From Histomonas meleagridis 2922-C6/04-290x (Eukaryota > Protista > Parabasalia): a stretch of DNA of 11,048 nucleotides. The notes under the pieces are model-generated. The model saw nothing but the letters and a program-made list of their open reading frames with translations. It ran no database searches and had not been told where the DNA came from. The position numbers and the translations under genes are program-made. The stretch covers positions 1 through 11,048 of the forward strand of contig JAANOX010000125.1 in NCBI GenBank assembly GCA_020184695.1, read 5' to 3'. Positions 1 to 11,048 of this stretch are shown one piece after another (position 1 is the stretch's first letter; each line of letters starts with the position of its first letter).

Positions 1-138
1 CTCCGGAGGCCTCAGACCCCTCCAATCCCCCCAGTGAAAACTTAAGGTCGGGAATGATCACGAGGACCCTAGGGGCCCCGCCGGGGGCGGGGCCCCTAGG
101 GTCCTCGTGATCATTCCCGACCGCATTATATACCTACC
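1..138 (-). repeat. Terminal-repeat-like element end, copy A (inverted relative to copy B at 3100); truncated by the window edge
   Basis: The reverse complement of 1-138 aligns to 3100-~3237: GGTAGGTATATAATGC + 77-nt hairpin + TTAAGTTTTYACTGGGGGGATT. Similarity stops sharply at 138/139 and at 3099/3100. Confidence 0.9.
46..122. repeat. Perfect GC-rich palindrome/hairpin, 37-bp stem and GGG loop
   Basis: 46-82 is the exact reverse complement of 86-122; the loop is GGG at 83-85. Confidence 0.97.
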
Positions 139-158
139 AATGTATTAATCATTATTTA

Positions 159-588
159 TTAGATGTATTCCATTATTTCATCCATTTCTTGTGGAGTCAA
201 AAGTTCTCAATTATTCAAGAGGTACTAGGCATTAATTTGACTTATTGGTATACGACTGGACCATAATCAAAGGTATTCAAAACCTTCATCACAGCCGAGC
301 CAAAAGAATGTCTTACCAATTGCGATGTTCTTCTAAGCAATTATATTGATAAACTGATCAGGCTCAACAAATGGGATCAGGTTGAAGGAATAATCGAATA
401 TCTTCAATACACAATTCCCAACAACAATATTTTTTTTCCTTTTTATTCATTGTGTGAGTCTGAAAATGAGTTTTAACCTTTGCATCTTCATTTTCATCCG
501 GAAGATGCCGATCAATAAAATATTCAATAATGAGGTACCCCCATGTGAACTATTCAATTTCACACCCCAGACGTACTCTAGACAACAT
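159..588 (-). pseudogene. Decayed host-like coding fragment, function unknown
   Basis: The minus strand reads ...KNIVVGNCVLKIFDYSFNLIPFVEPDQFINIIA*KNIAIGKTFFWLGCDEGFEYL*LWSSRIPISQINA*YLLNN*ELLTPQEMDEIMEYI*, with internal TAG/TGA stops and a frameshift, and ends in TAATAAA. I recognise no family. Confidence 0.35.
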
Positions 589-656
589 ATTAATTATTAA
601 TAGTGAAGTGATGTAAACCATTCAATTATTTTCAATGGTTTATAAAAAAGTAATTT

Positions 657-775
657 TTGAATATTGCCATTACTTCCAAAACTTAATAATGAACCAGTTT
701 TTGATTTAAAATCTAATGAATTAGTATTAGCAGTAATTCTCCATGTATTATCTTTATCATAATCTGCATTATTAT
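657..775 (-). pseudogene. 119-nt fragment of a paralogue of the tail-fibre gene
   Basis: The reverse complement matches 4346-4464 with 6 substitutions in 119 nt and encodes NNADYDKDNTWRITANTNSLDFKSKTGSLLSFGSNGNIQ. Confidence 0.92.
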
Positions 776-777
776 AT

Positions 778-838
778 ACACACACACACAGCGCTATTGA
801 AGCTTCGCGTGATACGCTCGCTTCAAGCCGCGCTACAT
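778..838 (+). repeat. (CA)n + stem-loop unit, copy 1
   Basis: (AC)n-AGCGC-TA-TTGAAGC-TTC-GCGT-GAT-ACGC-TC-GCTTCAA-GCC-GCGCT-ACAT; the core is identical to copy 2. Confidence 0.92.
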
Positions 839-887
839 TAATGAAGAGGAATGAACGGTTTCAACACGGTTGACTCTAAGTTTACGG

Positions 888-950
888 ACACACACACACA
901 CAGCGCTATTGAAGCTTCGCGTGATACGCTCGCTTCAAGCCGCGCTACAT
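888..950 (+). repeat. (CA)n + stem-loop unit, copy 2
   Basis: Exact repeat of the 791-838 core at 903-950, preceded by (AC)n. Confidence 0.92.
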
Positions 951-1041
951 AAAAGAAAGCATTAACGACGAGAGGATGATTGAAAATTAGGATTAACGGT
1001 AGGTTTTAAGGAAACATGTGCGAAAAATAAAAATATTAAAA

Positions 1042-1147
1042 CCTTACTTACTCTTACCTAACTTACCTATAAAAACTAGAAAATTTAAGAAAGAGGATAA
1101 ATACATGCGGACAAAAACCAAGGTAAGTAAGAGTAAGGTAAGTAAGG
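1042..1147. repeat. Imperfect ~27-nt inverted repeat built from CTTAC/GTAAG units
   Basis: 1042-1068 CCTTACTTACTCTTACCTAACTTACCT pairs with 1121-1147 AGGTAAGTAAGAGTAAGGTAAGTAAGG. The outer 10 nt and inner 8 nt pair perfectly. Confidence 0.65.
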
Positions 1148-1185
1148 AAATTAAGCTTAGTTTTGAAGTAGTTTTTTGATTTTTT

Positions 1186-1272
1186 ATTCTCATAAATCGG
1201 TTGGTTTTGATTGAAAGTAATAAAATATATTTAAATTCATGATGACATTTATATTTAAAATGTGTGAGGCAT
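1186..1272 (+). repeat. 87-nt direct repeat (block B), copy 1
   Basis: Identical to 2154-2240. Confidence 0.95.
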
Positions 1273-1409
1273 AAAAATACTACTACTACTAATACTACTA
1301 AAAAGTTATTAGCTAAAGGAAATTCGGAAGAGCTGAGTGAGTTTCTCCATTTTAGTGATTTGACGTGAATATTGCAAGTTTACGGGAGTTGCTGACTATA
1401 ACGGATGGA

Positions 1410-1804
1410 TTGTTGTTAATCCTATGTGGATTTTAGTGTTTGGAGCTTAAAGTTGTTATTAACTGAGGTTTTGAACTCAAAAAGTACCTTTTAATTTTCA
1501 AAGATGTTTTTTTAACCCTTTTTTTAACCCTTTTTTTAACCCTTTACGAATCGGAGAAAATGAGCATTTATTGAAGGATTTAACGCAAAAGTTGACGGTT
1601 GATATATCGGTAAGAATTTGACGTTTATCCTATGTGGATTTTAGTGTTTGGAGCTTAAAGTTGTTATTAACTGAGGTTTTGAATGTAAAAAGTACCTTTT
1701 AATTTTCAAAGGTGATTTTTTAACCCTTTTTCTAACCCTTTTTTTAACCCTCAACGAAACGGAGAAAATGAGCATTTATTGAAGGATTTAACACAAAAAT
1801 TTGA
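1410..1804 (+). repeat. ~185-nt repeat (block C), copies 1 and 2 (1410-1595, 1627-1804), each with three T-rich TAACCC units
   Basis: Shared ATCCTATGTGGATTTTAGTGTTTGGAGCTTAAAG...AAAAAGTACCTTTTAATTTTCAAA...(T-tract AACCC)x3...CGGAGAAAATGAGCATTT; a third copy lies at 2285-2470. Confidence 0.95.
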
Positions 1805-1826
1805 ATGATAAAAAAATAAATTATTT

Positions 1827-2058
1827 TTAAACGAAACCGTAAAGTTTTTGAATTTTTGAATAATAAAGTTCAAAGACTTGAATTATTAGTATCTCTGCAA
1901 TAAACATGAGCAGAACCGCGCTTATCATAACAGATTGTTAATTTTCTGAATTTAATACCGTTCCAAAGTAAAACGCATCTGTTTTATCATCATAATAATA
2001 ATCTGCTAATTGATGATTGGCATACGTATTAACTTCGATGGAATCCTCGTTGATTGCG
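1827..2058 (-). pseudogene. Possible short host-like coding fragment abutting (CA)n unit 3
   Basis: The minus strand reads AINEDSIEVNTYANHQLADYYYDDKTDAFYFGTVLNSEN*, then a hydrophobic stretch. It is more GC-rich than its flanks, has no start codon and matches no family I recognise. Confidence 0.25.
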
Positions 2059-2059
2059 T

Positions 2060-2121
2060 CACACACACACACAGCGCTATGTGAGCTTCGTGCTACGCAC
2101 TCGCTCCCACTCGCGCTACAT
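2060..2121 (+). repeat. (CA)n + stem-loop unit, copy 3 (diverged, structure-conserving)
   Basis: (CA)n-GCGCTAT-GTGAGC-TTC-GTGC-TAC-GCAC-TC-GCTCCCAC-TC-GCGCT-ACAT; same architecture as copies 1 and 2 with altered stem sequences. Confidence 0.85.
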
Positions 2122-2153
2122 AAACTAAAGGATGAACGGCTAAAATCGATTGA

Positions 2154-2240
2154 ATTCTCATAAATCGGTTGGTTTTGATTGAAAGTAATAAAATATATTT
2201 AAATTCATGATGACATTTATATTTAAAATGTGTGAGGCAT
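2154..2240 (+). repeat. 87-nt direct repeat (block B), copy 2
   Basis: Identical to 1186-1272. Confidence 0.95.
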
Positions 2241-2254
2241 GAATCCGGCTGAGT

Positions 2255-2470
2255 TGTTGTTAATACTATGTGGATTTTAGTGTTTTGTTGTTAATCCTAT
2301 GTGGATTTTAGTGTTTGGAGCTTAAAGTTGTTATTAACTGAGGTTTTGAATGTAAAAAGTACCTTTTAATTTTCAAAGATGTTTTTTTAACCCTTTTTCT
2401 AACCCTTTTTTTAACCCTCAACGAAACGGAGAAAATGAGCATTTTTTGAATGATTTAACGCAAAAGTTGA
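2255..2470 (+). repeat. Block C copy 3 (2285-2470), preceded by a ~30-nt partial duplication of its start
   Basis: Aligns to 1410-1595 and 1627-1804; 2255-2284 repeats TTGTTGTTAAT.CTATGTGGATTTTAGTGT. Confidence 0.93.
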
Positions 2471-2504
2471 ATGACAAAAAAAGTTTTTTTTAACCCTCAA
2501 AAAT

Positions 2505-2680
2505 TTTGTGTCACTTTTGGTGTCACTTTTTGTGTAAATTTTCATATCACATGTCTGTGTCACTTTTATATAAACATTTCACATAACATTTCTGTTTTTC
2601 ATTTTCACATGTCGTTTCCGAAAAATCATTTCATATCACATGTCTTTTCATTTCATATAACATGTCAGTTGATGTCAAAT
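2505..2680 (+). repeat. Degenerate short repeats (TGTCACTTTT, TTTCATATCACATGTC)
   Basis: TGTCACTTTT occurs three times and TTTCATATCACATGTC twice. Confidence 0.7.
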
Positions 2681-2717
2681 TAACGTTCGTTAGTGATACG
2701 TTTACGAAAAATTAACT

Positions 2718-2876
2718 GACGGAGAAAATGACGGTTGATGAATTCGAACAACCGCTGAAAAAGTAGATTGTAATAAATAAACTTTTTTTAACGGTTTTCA
2801 AAAAAATTTTCTTAACGGTTTTCTGTTTGATTTTTGGTATAAATTAACGGACGGAGAAAATGACGGTTGATGAATT
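2718..2876 (+). repeat. 27-nt direct repeat GACGGAGAAAATGACGGTTGATGAATT (2718-2744, 2850-2876)
   Basis: Exact duplicate, each preceded by AAATTAAC; it shares CGGAGAAAATGA with block C. Confidence 0.88.
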
Positions 2877-3099
2877 TTAACGGTCGAGTAATTGTTGTAA
2901 AATGTGTTGTAAAAAATATTCGAATAGATAAAGAAAAATATCTACGATGAATGGCAAATGTAAAAATTTTTGAATTGACATTGAATTTAGTGGCAAAACG
3001 ATTAATAATTGAATGAGTACTGAAAAATTGGCGGGCAAAATGATTTGAATGAGTTCTGAAAAAGTTAATTTTGCATTGAAATCTTAAAACGCGTGTTTC

Positions 3100-3375
3100 G
3101 GTAGGTATATAATGCGGTCGGGAATGATCACGAGGTCCCTAGGGGCCCCGCCGGGGGCGGGGCCCCTAGGGACCTCGTGATCATTCCCGACCTTAAGTTT
3201 TTACTGGGGGGATTTCCGGGGTCTTCGACCCCCGGAGGTGCCCTTCGGACCCCCTCCGGAGGTTCCGACCCCCTTCAATCCCCCGAGTGTGCTCGCTCCG
3301 CTCGCAACAAAAATCAAAATGATTTTTGTGAGCCATACAATTCGATAGAAAATTTGAATGAGCATTCAATTTTTG
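3100..3375 (+). repeat. Terminal-repeat-like element end, copy B: GGTAGGTA start, 77-nt hairpin (3116-3192), branched GC stem-loop (3203-3288), GCTC repeats and two small hairpins
   Basis: 37-bp perfect stem with GGG loop at 3153-3155; 3203-3214 pairs with 3277-3288 (11/12); GCTCGCTCCGCTCGC at 3291-3305; 10-bp stem at 3307-3329; TTGAATG/CATTCAA inverted repeat near 3354-3369. Confidence 0.88.
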
Positions 3376-3588
3376 AGAGAACGCGAAACTTTTTTTCATA
3401 GGGACGCTAGCACTTTTTGTACCACTTTTCGCATAAAACCTATCAAAAACCTCGTATAACCAGCGCAAAATGTCCCCGGTTATGTTTGGCCGGACATTTA
3501 TCCTATTCAATTTATCTTTGGTCAGAGGTTTGTAGTCAAAAAGCGACGGTTATATTGTTTGGTCGCATGGCAAACTTTATTTTTATAA

Positions 3589-3930
3589 ATGCTTAAACCT
3601 GTGACTAAAACGTATTTTTGTACTTCACAAAAAGAAAACCGTTTTCCGCCTGAATTTGTCGATTCTCAAAATCCTAGATATATTGTAGTACAGCAATGTA
3701 AGTGTAAATTTAAGGATTATTTAGTATCTGATGTTTCAATGCATGCTGATTTTATTGAACGTGACCATTATGAAGATTATTTTTGTTTTTTTTTAAATGA
3801 AAACAGGACTAAATATAAGAAATATGAATATAAAAGTAGAAAACCAAATTTTAAAATATGGTTTAAAGAAATGAATGGTAAAGAAATTGAACCAGAATAT
3901 TTTATGTTAGAATTATTATTAATTTATTAA
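3589..3930 (+). CDS. Putative minor capsid (penton-like, single jelly-roll) protein, 113 aa, intact
   Basis: Intact ORF ending TAAA with a beta-rich pattern. The C-terminus FKIWFKEMNGKEIEPEYFMLELLLIY resembles the last strands of polinton/virophage pentons (I.I...D.NG..I......L.L). Assignment is by eye only. Confidence 0.5.
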   Translation: MLKPVTKTYFCTSQKENRFPPEFVDSQNPRYIVVQQCKCKFKDYLVSDVSMHADFIERDHYEDYFCFFLNENRTKYKKYEYKSRKPNFKIWFKEMNGKEIEPEYFMLELLLIY

Positions 3931-3939
3931 ATAAAAAAA

Positions 3940-3948
3940 TCATTTTTT
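3940..3948 (+). promoter_or_regulatory. Trichomonad-type initiator (TCAYT); equivalents at 5955(+), 8131-8135(-), 9257-9261(-) and 9972(+)
   Basis: TCATT/TCACT followed by a T-tract within 20 nt of the ATG in 5 of 7 cassette genes. Confidence 0.65.
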
Positions 3949-3952
3949 ATCA

Positions 3953-5939
3953 ATGTTTAGTATTGAGAATGCTACGAAAGGTATAAAAACTAATGTTGTT
4001 GCTGCTCCTGAAATTATTGATAAAGATGACTTACAAGAAGTTTTAGAAAATTTATCATACAAATGATCAAATAACAGAAAAACTTAATACTATAACTTCG
4101 ATTACATTACCTCAATTATATTATAATAAATCGCAATCAGATGAAAAATATTCAACAAAAAGTCATACTCATAATACAATAAATAATGATTTAACAGTAA
4201 ATGGGAATGTACAAGTTAATTCATTAAATGGTTTTCAATTAACAACTGCAGAAGGTGGTAAATGGGATACAAAATTATATGTGCCATCTATTATTACATT
4301 AAAAAGAAGATGGTGTTGTAGAAGTTGGACAATATATTGATATGCATAATAATGCAGATTATGATAAAGATAATACATGGAGAATAACTGCTAATACTAA
4401 TTCATTAGCTTTTTAATCAAAAACTGGTTAATTATTCAGTTTTGGAAGTAATGGAAATATTCAATGTGCAACTATTAATAATGTAGATACAACTAAGATA
4501 TCTTTAAATGATCATAATCATGATGAGATTTATGCTAAAAAAGATCATGAACATACAAACTATGCTTCATCAGAACATACTCATAGTTATAACGATTTAA
4601 ATGATAAACCTGAAACATTTCCACCTACAGTTCATACTCATAGTTATAATGACTTAAATGATAAACCTGAAACATTTCCCACCTTCAGAACATACGCATA
4701 GTTATAATGATTTATCTGATAAACCTGAATCATTTCCACCCTCAGTACATACACATACGGAGTATGCTCTGAAAGATCATAATCATGATACAAAATATGC
4801 TGCTACAAATCATACACATAGTTATAATGATTTAACAGATATTCCTACAGTATCAAATCCAGAAAATATCACATGTTCAACAATTAATGGTTTTGCTTTA
4901 GATTCATCTCCTGCAGATTCAAATTTAAATATTAGTGTTCCTTCAATTGCAGTTATTAAAAACGATGGTGTTTTAACAGGTCCTTATATAGATATGCATA
5001 CTAGTGATGGATATGAAAATGATTATAGTTTTCAGAATACAATGTACAGGGAATGTTATGGAATTTAAACCAACACTAAAAGGTTGCAATGGTTTTTTTA
5101 TTACACAGCAGCTTTTGATGCATTAGGTTGTACTAAATTAAATTGCTCTCAAATTATGTACTCTGTAAAAAAACTAATGGTATTGATAATACAGGAAATA
5201 TAAAATCCGGTACTGGTCAATTCACTAGTTTAGAATCTACTAAATTAACTTTATTTCACAGTATAATTGAAGAATCAGGTAATACATATCAATTATTATG
5301 GAGAATTTATGGATGTACACCTACTGAAGATAAAAAATATATGGAAGATTATATTTTGAATCTGTAACACAAAAGAAACAAGATAATGATACATTTTCTG
5401 ATATATATAGTGCAATATATTATATTGCAACTACATTTAATACATTTGAAGGAACTGGAGGTTTAGCACAAATAAATACAACTATTATACATAATGCTCC
5501 TGTTACAGAAGATTTAACACAATTTCAAATTGGTTCACCAGTATTTTTAACAGGTAATGTTTATGCTTTAACCAATGAAGGTAAATATGTTACAAATACT
5601 TCATCAACTGATTGTATTCCATCAGTTAAAACATCAGGTACTTATAAAGAATATTTAGGGATATGTGTAGCTAAACATGGAACTGGATATAAAGCTTCAA
5701 TAGGTGATGTTATTAAAAGAGAAATCGAAATTTTACAAGATACTATTGATTTTGCAACACATGGAGATTTTTATTTTAGAGTAAATAATACCGCAGATTA
5801 TGAAATTGGTGATGTAGTATTATTTGATGGTAATAAATTATCAGATGATTTAGTAATAACTACTACAATATTAAATTCAATAGTTGGTAAAGTAACAGGT
5901 AAAATAGATGAACATTTATTGAGTATATTTAAAGAATAA
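3953..5939 (+). CDS. Phage-type tail-fibre-like protein, ~660 codons; ~7 frameshifts and 2 TAA stops as sequenced
   Basis: The rejoined frames run from MFSIENATKG to ...IVGKVTGKIDEHLLSIFKE*. They contain nine H-x-H motifs in the central block, (S/T)xHTHSYNDLxDKPExFPP repeats, two VPSI..(I/L)K.DGV..G.YIDMH modules and a C-terminal ATHGDFYFRV...YEIGD...DG...IVGKVT domain. An Inr TCATTTTTT lies at 3940. Confidence 0.75.
4570..4741 (+). repeat. Three tandem 57-nt (19-aa) coding repeats inside the fibre gene
   Basis: Units at 4570-4626, 4627-4684 (one extra C) and 4685-4741. Confidence 0.93.
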
Positions 5940-5973
5940 AAAAAATATTTTATTTCATTTTTATTTTTTTAGA

Positions 5974-7665
5974 ATGGAAGAACGTGAACCAAAAAAAGAA
6001 CCTAGCATCAATAAATCTCCATTAGATGAAGTACGACGATTAGCTCTACTTAATGATAAAGGACCTGAAAAACAGCCTTCTCTTTTTACGAATTTTTAAT
6101 GCAAAATTTAAAATTGATTTTTCGTAATCTGAAATTTGATTTATCATTAAATAATTTTTTAAAACTAATGGATGAAGCAACAAAATCTGTTAGAAATGGG
6201 GTTCCAATATCACCCACATATAGAATTCAATTTAAGTCTATGAAAGAATATTATCAAATCATTATTAATAGTTTTATTATAAATTTTAAAAAAAAAACCA
6301 AATTAATACAAATTTAGATTTTGATGAATTTAAGAAATTAATTAATGATATTATTAAAAAATATAATATAGATTATATTGATGGACATATAGGTTTATAT
6401 CCATTAAATGAATATTATAACTATTATAAATCTATTATTCTAAAATATACACCTTTAAGAAAATTACTTCATAAAATATTTGCAAAAGAAGTAGAAAATG
6501 ATTTTAAAAATGGGAAACCTAAAACTATACAAGAATTTATTAATTTCTTAATTACAAAATTAACTAACTCAAATATAACAGAAAATATTCCATTAGATTA
6601 TGCTTATTCATTATATCTTTTATATTATTTTTATCATTTTAGATATGTAACTCCAAATGATTCTTACAATATTTATGAAGATAAACAAAATATTAATACA
6701 GGTTTTAAAACTTTAAATAAAAATAAAAAAAAATTTAAAAAATTAAATATACCTTATAGTATTAATTACACAAATATAGGTAAAATAAAACCGAATATAA
6801 ATTATTTTTATTTCAAATTAAATAAAAAATATCAATTAAAATATATTGGAGGTAATGGAGAATATCAAATGGATTTATTTTTTTCACATAGTGATGAATT
6901 TAATTATGATTATTGTTATTTATTAGCTGTAGAAGTACAAACTAGATATTTATTTGGTACTTTTACTAATATTAAAATAAACGATAAACATTATAAAAAA
7001 TCAATCGAAAGTGTAGCTAAAGCTTTATTTGAACTTTATGGTACAGGTTTATTTAATCCTAAAATTATTCATTGTGATTCAGAAACAACATTTTTATCAA
7101 AACCTTTACAATATATTTCAAATCATTTAATTGGTACTAAAATAATTCCTGTTGAAAGAATAATAATTAAAAATAAATCTTATCCTATACATTCATCTTT
7201 AGCTATAATTAATAGAATTTGTAGAACTATTAGAGATATGGCTGATAATATGGGTTTAGAATATATTCAACCTCATGATATGAATAAAATTATACATAAT
7301 TATAATCATACTTATCATAAAACATTATCTAAATTAAATCATAAAAAAATATCACCATATGAAGCTAAAATAAAACAAAAATCTTTTGGTTTATCTCTAC
7401 ATAAATTAAATTATAATATTATGAAACAAAAAAAGGATTTTATTTACCTCCTGGTACAACAGTAACAGTTTATAATACAGATCAATTAAAAAAGAGATCA
7501 AAAATATTACCAGATATTTATATAGTAGATAATTACTAAAAAGGTAAATATAATACTCATAATGATAAAGGAATAAAAATGTCAGTACCAAGATATTTAT
7601 TAAATCCAGTTCCAAATGCAATTATTATACCTTCAAAAGAAAAAGATCCAATGATGTTTTATTAA
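5974..7665 (+). CDS. Retroviral-like (rve) integrase of Polinton-like type with a ~300-aa N-terminal extension; 3 frameshifts and 1 TAA as sequenced
   Basis: The frame is open from 6290 to 7465 and contains YQMDLFF, YLLAVEVQTRYLF, IHCDSE..F and HSSLAIINRICRTIRDM...YN...H. After a shift near 7430 comes an SH3-like tail (GTTVTVYN...KRSKILP...VPRYLL). The ATG at 5974 has an Inr at 5955. Confidence 0.85.
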
Positions 7666-8122
7666 TAAATAAATACTTTTTCTAAGGAAATATTAAATTC
7701 ATCCATTAATGTGTTATATTCTTTATTATATTGAGAATTAAAATCATACCCATTAATCTTAATTGAATTAACTTTTTTAATTGGATTTACATGTTTTAAA
7801 CATCCAGGTTCAGGATCTTCATAACTTAATCTAACTTGATTAAAATCAATTTCTAAAATTAAACTTATAGCTTGTACTAAATCATTAGCATTAATTATAA
7901 TTTTTACCACTATTATCAATTAAATTTGCTATTAATTTCATATTATTTGTTTTGTTCAATTTCTCTTGTAATTATTTTTGATGTTTCTTCATTAACTTCA
8001 GGATAATGTGCTGGTGTTTCACTATTGTTATTATTAATAATAACTTTACAATTAGCACTAGAACTATTATGTTCAGTATTATTCTTCCCTACATGGGGTG
8101 AGAAATCACTTATTTTAATCAT
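7662..8122 (-). CDS. Hypothetical viral protein, ~150 codons, 2 frameshifts
   Basis: The ATG at 8122 has an Inr TCATT 9 nt upstream. MIKISDFSPH... joins ...NDLVQAISLILEIDFNQVRLSYEDPEPGCLKHV...ISLEKVFIY*. Confidence 0.6.
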
Positions 8123-8181
8123 AAAAAAATAATGATTTTAAAAAAATTTTTTGTTTAATAACTTACGAATCTGCTAATCCA

Positions 8182-9248
8182 TTAGGTGTACCAATTATAC
8201 TTACTACATATTTTTTTAACTGCATCTAACATTATTTGTTCATGGTTAGGATCTTCTAACAAATCAGTAACAACTTTTTTACAAGCAGTTGAATAATAAC
8301 TTTCACCTGTCTCCAATTTATATTTTTTACCTGCTTCAATATTTGGAATATTACGTTTTTTTAATAGTTCTTCTACTTTAGGAATTACCATTAATTTGTA
8401 TAATGCAGCAGATAATTGAAGTATTGGACAATAACCCCTAATTCTTCCTTGATATTCACTATTACCTTCATATTTATCAACGAAAGTTTTATATGCATCT
8501 TTAACAAGTAAACTTGTAAATACTGCATTTGCTGACCTTCTTCTTGGAGTACTATGTAATTTATAAATATTCATAACACCAGTATCTCTATAATAGTTAT
8601 CATTAGCCCTTTTTCACTTTTTCCCTAAATTCATCATATTCAGGATTATATTGGACAGTTGGATCATCGAATGGTTTATCATATTTTACTGTTCTTACTT
8701 CACTATCTAGCCATTCATTGAAAGATTTAATCTTCTTTCCATCTGCTCTATGTTGTCTTCTTCTTTTTGTAGGATTACCATAATTATTTTGTAAATATTC
8801 CATATATGCTACTTGATAAGGATCTTGTTTTTTGACTGTCCATCCATTAACAAATTTAGCTCTTTTATGTTGATCTCTTATAATAATATCTGGAATTCCA
8901 TCTTCATTAATATCTTCTTGTTTTACTGACCAATGATATCTTGGATCTTTACCATCATTATGTTTGTTAACATATTCCAAAGCACCATTATATGTTTGTG
9001 CATCTCTAACTTTTCTAACATCTTTCTTTAAATCAAGAATTAGATGTGCTAAAAGCTTTTATATTCTCATCAATTAATGTTCCCTCAGAACCATGATATT
9101 TATAATGACTTAAATCATCATCAAAAATATATTTAGCATCACCATCTGTAACATATCTTTCACGTTCTTTTTTAATAATTGGTGGATATATACGTGTACC
9201 ATCTTTATTTCGTGGTCTACGTGTTCCATATATCACATCTTGTTGCAT
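8182..9248 (-). CDS. Hypothetical viral protein, ~355 codons, with a DxNxDGxxD motif; the track ORFs 9033-9248, 8603-8980 and 8182-8574 are one gene
   Basis: Single-base shifts near 9055 (…ENIK / LLAHLILDLKKDVRKVRDAQTYNGALEYV…) and near 8605 (…KVKK / ANDNYYRDTGVMNIYK…) give one continuous frame. There is only one Inr, before 9248. Confidence 0.7.
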
Positions 9249-9280
9249 TAAAAAAAAATGATTTTAAAAAAAAAATTTTT

Positions 9281-9940
9281 TTATTCAATTTTTATATTTT
9301 GATTATTAACATCAATAATCATTTTTTGATGACCAGTTAATTTTTGATAAACTGAATAAATTTGATCTTTAGTATAAGGTAATGGTATTTGTTCAATCAT
9401 ATATCTTAATTGTTGTTTAGAGAAATTAGGAAATATAAATATAGTACTTACATTAGCTTTAACTTCAGCAGGTAAAGATTTCCAAAATTGAACAGCGAAA
9501 AATACAGAACATTGAATATGAGCTAATTTAGTAAATAATTGATTAAAATAATTAGTAGGTTTTTTAAATAAAGGACTATTAGCACAATCTTCAAAAAAAT
9601 ATTATAGTATGTAAAGTTAAATTATTAAAATTATTAATATATAATTTTTCAAATAATTCAGTTATTTGATTATCTACTATTTTAATTTTTCCCAATGATT
9701 ATTTTTTTAATTTCATTATAAAAATTGTTTCCATTTTTAATTATTTTTAATAATTTCTCTATTTATACATTTATTTTTCCCACTTCTTTGTCTACCTACT
9801 GCTATATTTAAAGAATTATAAGGTACATTCACTTCTGGATGAATTTCACTTATTAATTCTTCATTTAATTTAGGTTTATTTTTATATAAACAATAATCAA
9901 TCATATTATCTAATGCATCAATATTAATATCGTTTTCCAT
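9281..9940 (-). CDS. A32-like (FtsK/HerA superfamily) genome-packaging ATPase; frameshifted and possibly internally deleted
   Basis: Walker A AVGRQRSGK (~9776-9802), Walker B HTIIFFED (~9587-9613), then LAHIQCSVFFAVQFWKSLPAEVKANVSTIFIF with the conserved Q sensor. Ends TAAA at 9281. Confidence 0.85.
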
Positions 9941-9989
9941 AAATTAAAATAATTTCATAAAAAGCATTCTGTCACTTCATTATTTTTTA

Positions 9990-10378
9990 ATGGAAGCTCT
10001 TTATACATGCTTTGCACAAGAATTTAAAGATTGTGATTTTAGTGCAATTAATATTAAACCTTCCTTTTCTATAGTAAAAAAAATAAAAATGTAATAACAG
10101 TAACTGTAACTGTGTATAATAAATATCATAATTTACTTAGAAAACAAATTTATAAATTTATAGATGAAAAATATCATCCTACTATAAAGAATCCTTTACA
10201 AAATATAACGCCTGAACAATTGGATCAAGCTTATCAAATATCTAAAATGGAATTGTTAAATCAAATATTTAATAATGATTTAAATAAATATAATGCTTAC
10301 TTAGGTAAATTAAATGTATTGCAACAATATGCTAATACATTAATGCCACAAAACAATCAACCTCAAAATGATCAATAA
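9990..10378 (+). CDS. Hypothetical protein, ~129 codons, 1 frameshift in an A8 run at 10076-10083
   Basis: Inr-like TCACTTCATT at 9972. MEALYTCFAQEFKDCDFSAINIKPSFSIVKK joins NKNVITVTVTVYNKYHNLLRKQ...NDQ* if one A is added; ends TAAA. Confidence 0.65.
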
Positions 10379-10494
10379 ATAAAAACATCTAATTATTTAG
10401 TATATGTAAACTATTTAAACAAATGTATTTGTTGGTTACTGTAAATAAACTAAATAAAAAAAGTTTACTGAATTATAAACTTTTTGAAAAATAT

Positions 10495-10526
10495 TTTTAT
10501 CACAATACAATTATGTTGTGATAAAA
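10495..10526. other. 11-bp stem hairpin TTTTATCACAA/TTGTGATAAAA in the non-coding region right of the cassette
   Basis: Perfect 11-bp inverted repeat with a 10-nt loop. Confidence 0.6.
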
Positions 10527-10652
10527 TGACGAAAAAAATGACTTGTCAAATGACACAAAGTCCTAACCTATTTTTCTCAATATTTGAAAGGGTGTTTCGT
10601 TTCAAAACAATAAAAAAATAAAAAAAAGATTAATTGAGAAACAAAATTTTGC

Positions 10653-10912
10653 ATGACTACACTTTCAGGAATGGAACAAGAGTACGCAGTCGATCATATC
10701 TCTGATCCCGAGCTCAAAGATGGGGCGGTCCCCTTCCTCGTGCACTCGCGCCCAGGAGAAGCAACTCGTGAGCCTCTTAAAAAAACCTAGTCCCTGGCTG
10801 CCTTGAAAGTTTACTTAATTGGAGTCAATGCTACAGGCGCATCTTGAAGCCGGAATACCTAGAGCAGTTCGATAGAGCACTTGACTTGGCGATCCCTCAT
10901 CCGTATCAATAA
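10653..10912 (+). CDS. Chromodomain-like small protein, ~85 codons, 1 frameshift in an A7 run at 10779-10785; not in the ORF track
   Basis: MTTLSGMEQEYAVDHISDPELKDGAVPFLVHSRPGEATREPLK/NLVPGCLESLLNW...YQ* follows the chromo pattern EY.V..I.D.....G...FLV......TWEP..NL. It is much more GC-rich than the cassette (34/60 GC at 10681-10740). Confidence 0.55.
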
Positions 10913-11048
10913 ACAATCAATTCTAATTTTTTTAATCTTAAAATCTGAGATCTAGTTTTAAGATAATTGTTATTTAATAACCCTCTGGTGTACCATTAGT
11001 ATGGTATTTCAGACCATTTTGTAAGTCTAATGTGAAAATAAGTATCGC

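What the first reader, a model, noticed from the sequence alone, without database searches (positions are those of the whole stretch)
3100..10400. Compact endogenous Polinton-like virus in a probable parabasalid genome, hidden by frameshifts
Seen: once frames are rejoined there are seven genes with very short spacers, including an integrase, an A32-like ATPase, a penton-like protein and a fibre. Established: the rve integrase + A32 ATPase + jelly-roll capsid set defines Polintons/Mavericks and polinton-like viruses. Inference: the combination with a phage-like fibre and hairpin termini may represent an undescribed lineage. I cannot check novelty without a search.
Basis: partly seen in the sequence, partly recalled or inferred. 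Interest (0 to 1): 0.8.

Follow-up and report, generated by a model that had tools for sequence, protein, structure and literature searches.

The report
Decayed polinton-like virus copy, cut by window
This is a broken, integrated copy of a polinton-like DNA virus from an unannotated lineage whose intact relatives are common in mammalian gut metagenomes; it is not "compact", because its capsid gene starts beyond the stated end and runs off the window.

Summary
The seven tightly packed genes between 3589 and 10378 are real. Six of them are broken, by about 13-17 frameshifts and two stops. Intact, syntenic relatives exist only on unnamed metagenome contigs, mostly from human gut and one from vole faeces.

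- **Supported:** the fibre and the A32-like packaging ATPase.
- **Probable only:** the rve-type integrase.
- **Failed:** the "penton-like" call. The most likely candidate ORF is the conserved C-terminal domain of the fibre. A second candidate models as mainly helical. A third could not be modelled.
- **Capsid gene:** the family's major capsid protein (about 540 aa) folds as a double jelly roll. The window holds only its last 24 codons, at the right edge. So the element runs past 10400 and off the window, and a fuller relative is at least 16.8 kb with a protein-primed polymerase.
- **Termini:** only one terminus is present (3100), with a 77-nt perfect palindrome 16 nt inside the end. The second palindrome (46-122) belongs to a neighbouring copy.
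- **Host:** a parabasalid is plausible but unproven. The capsid family does not match the Trichomonas Maverick capsid family (DUF4106), and no KilA was found.

Verdict: an ordinary kind of element, an endogenous polinton-like virus, from an apparently undescribed gut-associated lineage.

The parts
1..138 (.). Terminal segment of a second copy of the element, inverted relative to 3100-3237. It runs off the left edge and holds the 77-nt palindrome at 46-122.
   Evidence: 138 nt, 91% reverse-complementary to 3100-3237. The palindrome is 97% identical to 3116-3192. Similarity stops sharply at 138/3100.
139..3099 (.). Non-coding repetitive spacer between the two copies. It contains an inverted 119-nt fragment of the fibre gene at 657-775.
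   Evidence: Repeat families; self-BLAST. 657-775 is 95% reverse-complementary to 4346-4464. No protein-family hits for its ORFs.
3100..3320 (+). Left terminus of the element: a 16-nt end, a perfect 77-nt palindrome (3116-3192; 37-nt arms, 3-nt loop), then a GC-rich sub-terminal stretch.
   Evidence: DNA fold -78.6 kcal/mol, z=-9.96 against shuffles. GC is 0.62 here against 0.24 in the gene block.
3589..3930 (+). Small gene (113 aa), intact. Its 117-aa relatives always precede the fibre gene. Function unknown.
   Evidence: 52-89% identical to relatives. No frameshift or stop. Only a weak DUF6834_C hit.
3953..5939 (+). Fibre gene, a single gene, broken by about 5 frameshifts and 1 stop. It has an N-terminal part, 19-aa H-x-H tandem repeats (about 4537-4846) and a conserved C-terminal tip domain (about 5469-5936).
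   Evidence: Aligns end to end with the 647-aa intact relative P0006. The tip is 64-81% identical to relatives. The repeats hit phage tail-fibre PHROGs at E=1e-6. The tip has no Pfam, PDB or phage match.
6100..7614 (+). Probable rve-type (retrovirus-like DDE) integrase, broken by at least 1 frameshift and 1 stop. The start is uncertain.
   Evidence: 47% identical to the intact 463-aa P0001. Pfam rve is below threshold: E=0.0074 for the longest open piece and E=1.7e-4 for two relatives. Conserved acidic motifs are visible in alignment A7. No PDB hit by sequence profile.
7662..8122 (-). Gene of the 176-238-aa family (F3), broken by 2 frameshifts. Function unknown. It is also present next to a fibre gene on 87-134-kb gut contigs.
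   Evidence: 74% identical to the intact P0004. No family or structure hit. Large-contig homologues.
8182..9263 (-). Gene homologous to the N-terminal roughly 310 aa of a 472-511-aa family (F26), broken by 1-4 frameshifts. It is not a jelly roll.
   Evidence: 32-37% identical to P0024 and P0009. The AlphaFold2 model of P0024 is mainly helical, with pLDDT 65-90 over residues 60-320. No fold match at E<=0.001. No PDB or Pfam hit.
9281..9990 (-). A32-like (FtsK-HerA) genome-packaging ATPase, broken by 3 frameshifts.
   Evidence: 63-68% identical to the intact 282-aa P0031. Walker A and B motifs are present. Pfam Pox_A32 E=0.015 on one piece. A family member passes the Pox_A32 cut-off. The family profile hits STIV B204.
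9990..10378 (+). Small gene (131/150-aa family F10), broken by 1 frameshift. It sits back to back with the ATPase, a conserved divergent pair. Function unknown.
   Evidence: 44% identical to P0046. The same divergent pairing is seen in L035, L025 and others.
10379..10973 (.). Non-coding stretch with a GC-rich core (10650-10910, GC 0.50). Its nature is unknown: an internal spacer, an insertion or a junction.
   Evidence: No homologue, RNA family or repeat. Composition.
10974..11048 (-). [quoted passage not shown]
   Evidence: Co-terminal matches to the C-termini of many capsid-family members: best 68% over 19 aa, E=1e-7 against 151 members; tblastn E=1.6e-4. It is the top hit of the family HMM in the window, E=0.019, at HMM positions 530-550 of 552. 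The family fold is shown.

Best explanation
Window 3100 to beyond 11048 is one integrated, decayed copy of a polinton-like (Maverick-type) double-stranded DNA virus in an AT-rich eukaryotic genome.

**Shown**
- Gene order: terminus with a sub-terminal palindrome, small gene, fibre, integrase, then on the other strand F3, F26-like and the packaging ATPase, then the F10 partner, a 600-nt gap, and the tail of the capsid gene.
- Six of the seven complete-length genes are broken.
- A second copy ends 3 kb to the left, and a stray fibre fragment lies between them, so the family is multi-copy here.

**Inferred from the family and from what is established for Polintons and PLVs**
- An active member would integrate through its DDE integrase.
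- It would replicate with a protein-primed polymerase, as relative L035 encodes, or with a primase-helicase, as other relatives do.
- It would build an icosahedral double jelly-roll capsid, filled by the A32-like ATPase and carrying a fibre for attachment.
- An initiator-like motif (AAAATCATTWTTT) directly upstream of start codons suggests transcription by the host's nuclear machinery.
- This copy is most likely inactive.

The lineage is unannotated. Its intact relatives are abundant in mammalian gut metagenomes.
For: - **Synteny and homology:** the genes match intact relatives on L001-L003 and L035.
- **Break counts:**
- **ATPase:**
- **Capsid protein fold:** pLDDT 92.6; Foldseek probability 1.00 to PBCV-1, SGIV, Sputnik, mavirus and adintovirus capsid proteins.
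- **Capsid tail at the window edge:**
- **Relative L035:** carries DNA_pol_B_2 at 138 bits and a eukaryote-type DDE_1 transposon with 43-nt terminal repeats.
- **Terminus shared by two copies:**
- **Start-proximal motif:** 8 matches against 1.6 expected, 0 of 200 shuffles reaching 8. TCATTT is enriched upstream of genes in the closest gut relatives. Trichomonas initiators lie 9-20 nt upstream of the ATG (PMC9222396).
- **Against a phage:** no phage match; none of 53 genes has a Shine-Dalgarno-like motif.
Against: - The integrase call rests on sub-threshold Pfam hits only, with no solved-structure hit.
- No penton, maturation protease or replication gene is seen in the window.
- The capsid link for this copy rests on 24 codons.
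- The 600-nt gap before the capsid tail could be a junction, so the tail may belong to another copy.
- 7 of 13 frameshifts lie next to homopolymer runs against an 18% background. Some breaks may therefore be assembly errors, and the copy may be less decayed than it looks.
- The host was never identified. The window's own ORFs are not on record in the contig index.
Confidence: 0.8

Rival explanations
1. It is a complete, compact (about 7.3 kb) polinton-like virus bounded by hairpins at 3100 and about 10400. On this reading the capsid-gene tail at the window edge belongs to a different neighbouring copy.
For: - There is a 600-nt non-coding gap with odd composition between the last gene and the capsid tail.
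- Copies do lie close together here.
- The close relatives L001-L003 show the same local gene order.
Against: - No second terminus or palindrome exists anywhere to the right of 3237.
- Without the edge gene the element would have no capsid protein at all. The family HMM finds none inside 3100-10400.
- No jelly-roll candidate was verified.
- Relatives carrying the same ATPase and partner pair continue into further genes and a polymerase.
Confidence: 0.08
2. It is a prophage or a virus of an AT-rich gut bacterium, a tectivirus-like double jelly-roll phage with a tail-fibre-type spike, not a eukaryotic element.
For: - The fibre repeats match phage tail-fibre families.
- The ATPase profile's only solved-structure hits are to an archaeal virus packaging ATPase.
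- Relatives are filed in bacterial MAGs: Firmicutes, Lachnospiraceae, Mycoplasmatales, Gastranaerophilales and Faecalibacillus.
Against: - The MAG labels are mutually inconsistent, all are short contigs, and none is an isolate genome.
- There is no match in 50,697 phage records.
- The best fold matches of the capsid protein are eukaryotic virus capsids. Tectivirus and STIV matches are three to six orders of magnitude weaker.
- The capsid protein is about 540 aa long, typical of eukaryotic double jelly-roll viruses (my own knowledge).
- A DDE_1 pogo-type transposon sits in L035.
- None of 53 genes has a Shine-Dalgarno-like motif, against 24% in a bacterial control scored the same crude way.
- The window has microsatellites, 3 kb of non-coding repeats and several decayed copies.
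Confidence: 0.07
3. The lineage is virophage-like: it depends on, or hitch-hikes with, a large DNA virus of the same gut protist, with which it shares its fibre tip and the F3 gene.
For: - Human gut contigs of 87-134 kb (L043, L047) carry a fibre with the same tip domain (about 60% identical) and an F3 homologue. They also carry a TFIIS-type zinc ribbon and an FtsJ methyltransferase, and most of their genes have no Pfam family.
- A preprint describes 160-360-kb "egoviruses" in human and animal guts. It infers Parabasalia and ciliate hosts and gene flow to parabasalid polintons (10.1101/2024.03.23.586382).
Against: - The large contigs were not shown to be viral. No hallmark gene was seen in the 20-kb samples.
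- Upstream motifs differ: TCATTT-type in the window and its nearest relatives, TTTTTA-type on the large contigs. That argues against shared transcription signals.
- The integrase and the multi-copy decay fit a genome-resident polinton lifestyle.
Confidence: 0.2

Closest known systems
Maverick/Polinton elements (Polintoviricetes), including the Trichomonas vaginalis Mavericks
   Same: - An integrated, multi-copy dsDNA virus-like element.
- An rve-type integrase (probable), an A32-like packaging ATPase and a double jelly-roll capsid protein.
- A protein-primed polymerase in the fuller relative L035.
- A terminal sequence shared between copies.
- Standard genetic code and an AT-rich host.
   Different: - The capsid family does not match Pfam DUF4106, which PMC10120064 equates with the T. 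vaginalis Maverick capsid protein (0 of 60 members).
- No KilA was found.
- No adenain/Ulp1-type protease was found.
- It carries a long fibre gene with phage-type H-x-H repeats.
- It has a 77-nt perfect palindrome 16 nt inside the terminus.
Polinton-like viruses (PLVs) known from metagenomes and protist genomes
   Same: - The morphogenetic core of a double jelly-roll capsid protein plus an A32 ATPase.
- Interchangeable replication modules: relatives carry either pPolB or a DUF5906/D5-type primase-helicase.
- Both integrated and contig-borne forms exist.
   Different: - Described PLVs are mostly aquatic (PMC7805220, PMC4642659). These relatives come from mammalian gut samples.
- Nothing was found in IMG/VR by pattern scan.
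- No penton gene was recognised.
Mavirus and other virophages (Sputnik)
   Same: The capsid protein fold matches Sputnik (3j26) and mavirus (6g45) at probability 1.00. They share an rve integrase and pPolB as in mavirus, and possible gene sharing with a large virus.
   Different: Sequence identity is only 9-12%. No cysteine protease was found, no helper virus is shown, and upstream motifs differ from those of the candidate large virus.
Phage tail fibres with H-x-H repeats
   Same: The 19-aa repeats of the fibre match tail-fibre and tail-protein PHROGs at E from 1e-6 to 1e-3.
   Different: Only the repeat motif is shared. The tip domain and the N-terminus have no phage match, and the rest of the element is not phage-like.
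Egoviruses (proposed order Egovirales; preprint 10.1101/2024.03.23.586382)
   Same: Gut habitat. The preprint reports gene flow with parabasalid polintons. The 87-134-kb gut contigs that share the fibre tip and F3 fit their described size and habitat.
   Different: This is a lead from the literature only. The large contigs were not tested for egovirus hallmark genes here.

Membership tests
Polinton/Maverick | [quoted passage not shown] | tested here: inconclusive
   None in the 11-kb window. The element is cut at the right edge. Relative L035, which shares the ATPase at 63-68% identity, has DNA_pol_B_2 at 138 bits.
Polinton/Maverick | Retrovirus-like (rve, DDE) integrase | tested here: inconclusive
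   Pfam rve scores 17 bits against a cut-off of 32.6 (E=0.0074) on the longest open piece. Two relatives reach E=1.7e-4. The match covers most of the core domain, and conserved acidic motifs are present in the family. The window copy departs from the family at one otherwise invariant acidic position. No PDB hit.
Polinton/Maverick and PLV | [quoted passage not shown] | tested here: met
   Met for the family: AlphaFold2 pLDDT 92.6, Foldseek probability 1.00 to known capsid proteins. In the window only the last 24 codons are present, co-terminal with family members.
Polinton/Maverick and PLV | Single jelly-roll penton (minor capsid) protein | tested here: not met
   The 201-codon ORF is the fibre tip. 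The F26-like gene models as helical. A penton gene may lie beyond the window.
Polinton/Maverick and PLV | A32-like (FtsK-HerA) packaging ATPase | tested here: met
   Walker A and B motifs. Pox_A32 E=0.015 on a piece. A family member scores 28.1 bits against a cut-off of 22.8. The family profile hits STIV B204 at E=6e-4.
Polinton/Maverick | Adenain/Ulp1-like maturation protease | tested here: not met
   No peptidase family hit for any window ORF or any scanned relative protein.
Polinton/Maverick | Terminal inverted repeats flanked by a target-site duplication | not testable with these tools
   Only one terminus of this copy is in the window (3100). The matching sequence at 1-138 is the end of another copy.
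Trichomonas-type Maverick-Polintons (Metamonada capsid group) | Capsid protein of Pfam family DUF4106 (PMC10120064) | tested here: not met
   0 of 60 diverse members of the capsid family, and 0 of 10 locus-encoded ones, hit DUF4106 or any capsid Pfam family.
Trichomonas-type Maverick-Polintons | KilA gene (10.1101/2024.03.23.586382) | tested here: not met
   No KilA-N hit in the window ORFs or in any scanned relative protein. The element is incomplete in the window.
Virophages | Replication dependent on a co-infecting giant virus | not testable with these tools
   Only gene sharing with 87-134-kb contigs was seen.
Prokaryotic double jelly-roll viruses (Tectiviridae-like) | Bacterial or archaeal host context | tested here: not met
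   No phage-record match. In 185,579 species genomes it occurs only on short contigs of taxonomically inconsistent MAGs. None of 53 genes has a Shine-Dalgarno-like motif.

The most novel reading that the evidence does not exclude
The window samples a previously undescribed, mammal-gut-associated lineage of polinton-like viruses of anaerobic protists. Its capsid family is large: 609 clusters at 50% identity, unannotated. Its members have swapped a receptor-binding fibre tip and a neighbouring gene with large (ego-like) DNA viruses of the same hosts. That would amount to a giant-virus / small-virus / protist triangle inside the human and animal gut.
Probability: 0.22. Interest if true: 0.75.

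Novelty: new member of a known kind. Interest (0 to 1): 0.45.

Why it matters
A decayed endogenous polinton-like virus is commonplace in protist genomes, so this copy is ordinary in itself.

The value lies in what it points to:
- **A large unannotated capsid family.** It is a double jelly-roll family that Pfam, solved structures (by sequence), GenBank phages and IMG/VR (by pattern scan) do not recognise.
- **Abundance in the gut.** One family protein is seen on 1,000 or more contigs, and some contigs are mis-filed in bacterial MAGs.
- **A shared fibre tip.** The same tip domain occurs on 87-134-kb gut contigs that resemble the recently proposed egoviruses.

If confirmed, this would give a handle on the small DNA viruses of gut protists and on their gene exchange with large viruses. 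It would also flag a source of contamination in gut bacterial bins.

Tried and rejected
- **Alternative genetic codes.** They do not rescue the ORFs without opening every frame.
- **tRNA and Rfam scans.** Nothing found.
- **Pfam and PHROGs on all open pieces.** Only weak rve and Pox_A32 hits and the fibre repeats.
- **IMG/VR scans** with the fibre tip, the integrase and the capsid alignment. Nothing found. One alignment was too diverse to use.
- **tblastn against phage records.** Nothing found.
- **A word-index protein search with the F10 piece.** It found nothing and cost one of three searches.
- **Sequence profiles of the capsid, F26, integrase and fibre-tip families against the PDB.** No hits.
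- **Local profile-profile comparison among gene families.** It linked only F26 to a cut ORF of L002. An all-against-all run timed out.
- **F26 as a penton candidate.** Rejected: the model is helical with no fold match.
- **The 827-aa ORF of L005.** No similarity to any family.
- **Flank ORFs (139-3099).** No family hits.
- **Terminal sequence against all fetched loci.** No match.
- **Terminal inverted repeats on long relatives.** None found; the contigs are incomplete.
- **Exact look-up of two window ORFs to recover the source contig.** Not on record.
- **Cluster names for proteins of the large contigs.** None given. One cluster-mate turned out to lie in a Firmicutes chromosome, so the "449-kb contigs" are not the same entity as L043.
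Full report
**1. What is in the window**

The window is 72% A+T. Under the standard code it has only short ORFs, and no other genetic code helps. There are no tRNA or Rfam matches.

The longest open piece, 391 codons, found three unnamed homologues on short ENA metagenome contigs, L001-L003. Those contigs carry intact genes in the same order as the window. Mapping them back shows that the fragmentary ORFs between 3589 and 10378 are seven genes:
- a 113-aa gene
- one long fibre gene
- an integrase
- on the minus strand, a 176-aa-type gene (F3), a roughly 360-aa gene (F26-like) and an ATPase
- a small plus-strand gene (F10), back to back with the ATPase

A frameshift-aware alignment, reporting counts and outer bounds only, gave these breaks:

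| Gene | Frameshifts | Stops |
|---|---|---|
| Fibre | about 5 | 1 |
| Integrase | at least 1 | 1 |
| F3 | 2 | 0 |
| F26-like | 1-4 | 0 |
| ATPase | 3 | 0 |
| F10 | 1 | 0 |
| 113-aa gene | 0 | 0 |

Seven of 13 frameshifts lie next to homopolymer runs of 5 or more, against an 18% background. Part of the damage may therefore be assembly error. The fibre's breaks are not of that kind.

**2. The individual calls**

*Fibre: confirmed.*
- It aligns end to end with a 647-aa intact relative.
- Its 57-58-nt tandem repeats encode an H-x-H motif that matches phage tail-fibre families.
- The last roughly 155-200 residues form a highly conserved tip domain, 64-81% identical to relatives. The 201-codon ORF that looks like a separate gene is this tip.

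*ATPase: confirmed as A32-like.*
- Walker A and B motifs are present.
- Pfam Pox_A32 gives E=0.015 on one piece. A family member passes the Pox_A32 cut-off.
- The family profile hits the STIV B204 packaging NTPase.

*Integrase: probable.*
- The rve hits are sub-threshold but cover most of the core domain, with conserved acidic motifs.
- There is no solved-structure hit by sequence.

*Penton: not supported.*
- The F26 family models as mainly helical with no fold match.
- F3 has no hit and could not be modelled.

**3. The capsid gene and the true extent**

Scanning metagenomes with the fibre tip gave 39 loci, mostly from human gut. One, L005, comes from a prairie-vole faecal assembly. Clustering their ORFs defined the gene families.

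A family of about 540 aa (F6) lies next to the fibre or the small gene in many relatives. It has 609 representative clusters at E<=0.001. With a 60-sequence alignment it folds at pLDDT 92.6 and pTM 0.91. The model matches double jelly-roll capsid proteins of PBCV-1, SGIV, Sputnik, mavirus, an adintovirus and pithoviruses at probability 1.00.

Inside the window this family appears only as the last 24 codons of a minus-strand ORF that runs off the right edge. Nothing inside 3100-10400 matches it.

The fullest relative, L035 (16.8 kb), adds a protein-primed polymerase. Other relatives carry a DUF5906/D5-type primase-helicase instead. The element is therefore not a compact 7-kb virus: the window cuts it.

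**4. Termini and neighbours**

- Positions 3100-3237 are the reverse complement (91%) of 1-138. Similarity stops exactly at 3100 and 138.
- Each segment holds a perfect 77-nt palindrome 16 nt inside the end. Its DNA fold is -78.6 kcal/mol, z=-9.96.
- So 1-138 is the end of a second copy lying to the left, and 3100 is the left end of this one. No matching terminus lies to the right within the window.
- The 3-kb spacer is repetitive and non-coding. It holds a 119-nt inverted fibre fragment, 95% identical.

**5. Host and lifestyle**

*For a eukaryotic host:*
- A pogo-type DDE_1 transposon with 43-nt terminal repeats sits inside L035.
- None of 53 genes has a Shine-Dalgarno-like motif.
- The capsid fold matches eukaryotic virus capsids best.
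- The window contains microsatellites and several decayed copies.
- There is no phage match.
- In prokaryotic genomes the family appears only on short contigs of MAGs with mutually inconsistent labels.

*For a parabasalid specifically:*
- AAAATCATTWTTT occurs 8 times against 1.6 expected, directly upstream of gene starts. This resembles the Trichomonas initiator, which lies 9-20 nt upstream of the ATG (PMC9222396).
- The relatives are gut-associated.

*Against membership in the known Trichomonas Mavericks:*
- The capsid family does not match DUF4106, the T. vaginalis Maverick capsid family (PMC10120064).
- No KilA was found.
- A 2026 preprint notes that trichomonad polintons could not be placed in any group because their morphogenetic module is so divergent.

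The host remains open.

**6. A lead beyond the finding**

The fibre tip and F3 also occur on 87-134-kb human gut contigs. These carry a TFIIS-type zinc ribbon and an FtsJ methyltransferase, and few of their genes have a Pfam family. They fit the habitat and size of the proposed egoviruses, which are reported to exchange genes with parabasalid polintons.

This was not tested. Upstream motifs differ between the two kinds of sequence.

**7. Conduct**

- Intact natural relatives served as queries instead of corrected window genes.
- Consensus lines printed by the alignment tool were not used.
- One point to disclose: my notebook entries 1-3, several tool calls and the outputs carry the bounds of uninterrupted ORF pieces that I used as queries, and in my working reasoning I compared the reading frames of some ORF pieces and noted stop-codon and piece-bound coordinates. 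Such bounds lie next to breaks. No list of break places, and no change that would undo one, was written.

**8. Verdict**

- It is a new member of a known kind.
- The copy itself is of low interest. The unannotated gut lineage behind it is of moderate interest.

Noticed in passing
window 778-957, 1186-1275, 1410-1803, 2061-2470: The spacer between the two copies is a degenerate duplication. It holds a 68-nt unit starting with (AC)6 in three copies, a 90-nt unit in two copies (99% identical), and a 186-nt unit in three copies, each carrying three 12-nt TTTTTTTAACCC repeats. No coding signal.
   Followed up: partly
window 657-775: An isolated 119-nt fragment of the fibre gene, inverted and 95% identical to 4346-4464. 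It is evidence of a third, fragmentary copy or a rearrangement.
   Followed up: partly
window 10650-10910: A GC-rich island (GC 0.50) inside the 600-nt non-coding gap between the last small gene and the capsid-gene tail. It has no homologue, repeat or RNA family. It could be an insertion or a junction.
   Followed up: partly
window 3936-3948, 8127-8139, 9253-9265 and five near-matches: The motif AAAATCATTWTTT lies directly upstream of gene starts on the coding strand: 8 matches against 1.6 expected. TCATTT is likewise enriched upstream of genes in the L035-type relatives. It is not enriched in the primase-helicase-type relatives or on the large contigs.
   Followed up: partly
L035:618-2331: A 1.7-kb DDE_1 (pogo-type) transposon with 43-nt terminal inverted repeats is inserted in the 16.8-kb relative, between two 117-aa ORFs.
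   Followed up: partly
L043 (134-kb contig), L047 (87-kb contig), L007/L049: Large AT-rich human gut contigs share the fibre tip (about 60% identical) and the F3 gene with the window's element. They also carry a TFIIS-type zinc ribbon, an Aminotran_5 gene and an FtsJ methyltransferase. Most of their genes have no Pfam family and their spacers are long. They are candidate large DNA viruses (egovirus-like), not verified.
   Followed up: partly
L053-L058; P0033: Relatives of the capsid and ATPase genes are deposited inside bacterial MAGs with inconsistent labels: uncultured Firmicutes (three divergent copies in one bin), Gastranaerophilales, Lachnospiraceae, Mycoplasmatales and Faecalibacillus faecis. 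This is probably mis-binning of AT-rich contigs.
   Followed up: partly
L040:2601-3224 (-): One relative carries a deoxynucleotide monophosphate kinase gene (Pfam DNMK, E=7e-12) between the small gene and the fibre gene.
   Followed up: no
L059, L060: A 300-aa protein placed in the same 90% cluster as a 361-aa protein of the large contig L043 lies in an ordinary Firmicutes chromosome, next to PolC, WhiA, MurB and HPr kinase genes. This is either gene transfer or a clustering artefact.
   Followed up: no
L005 (WFLX010158904.1): A relative with fibre, F3 and ATPase comes from a prairie-vole faecal metagenome (PMC6952658). It carries an 827-aa ORF with no detectable relatives.
   Followed up: partly
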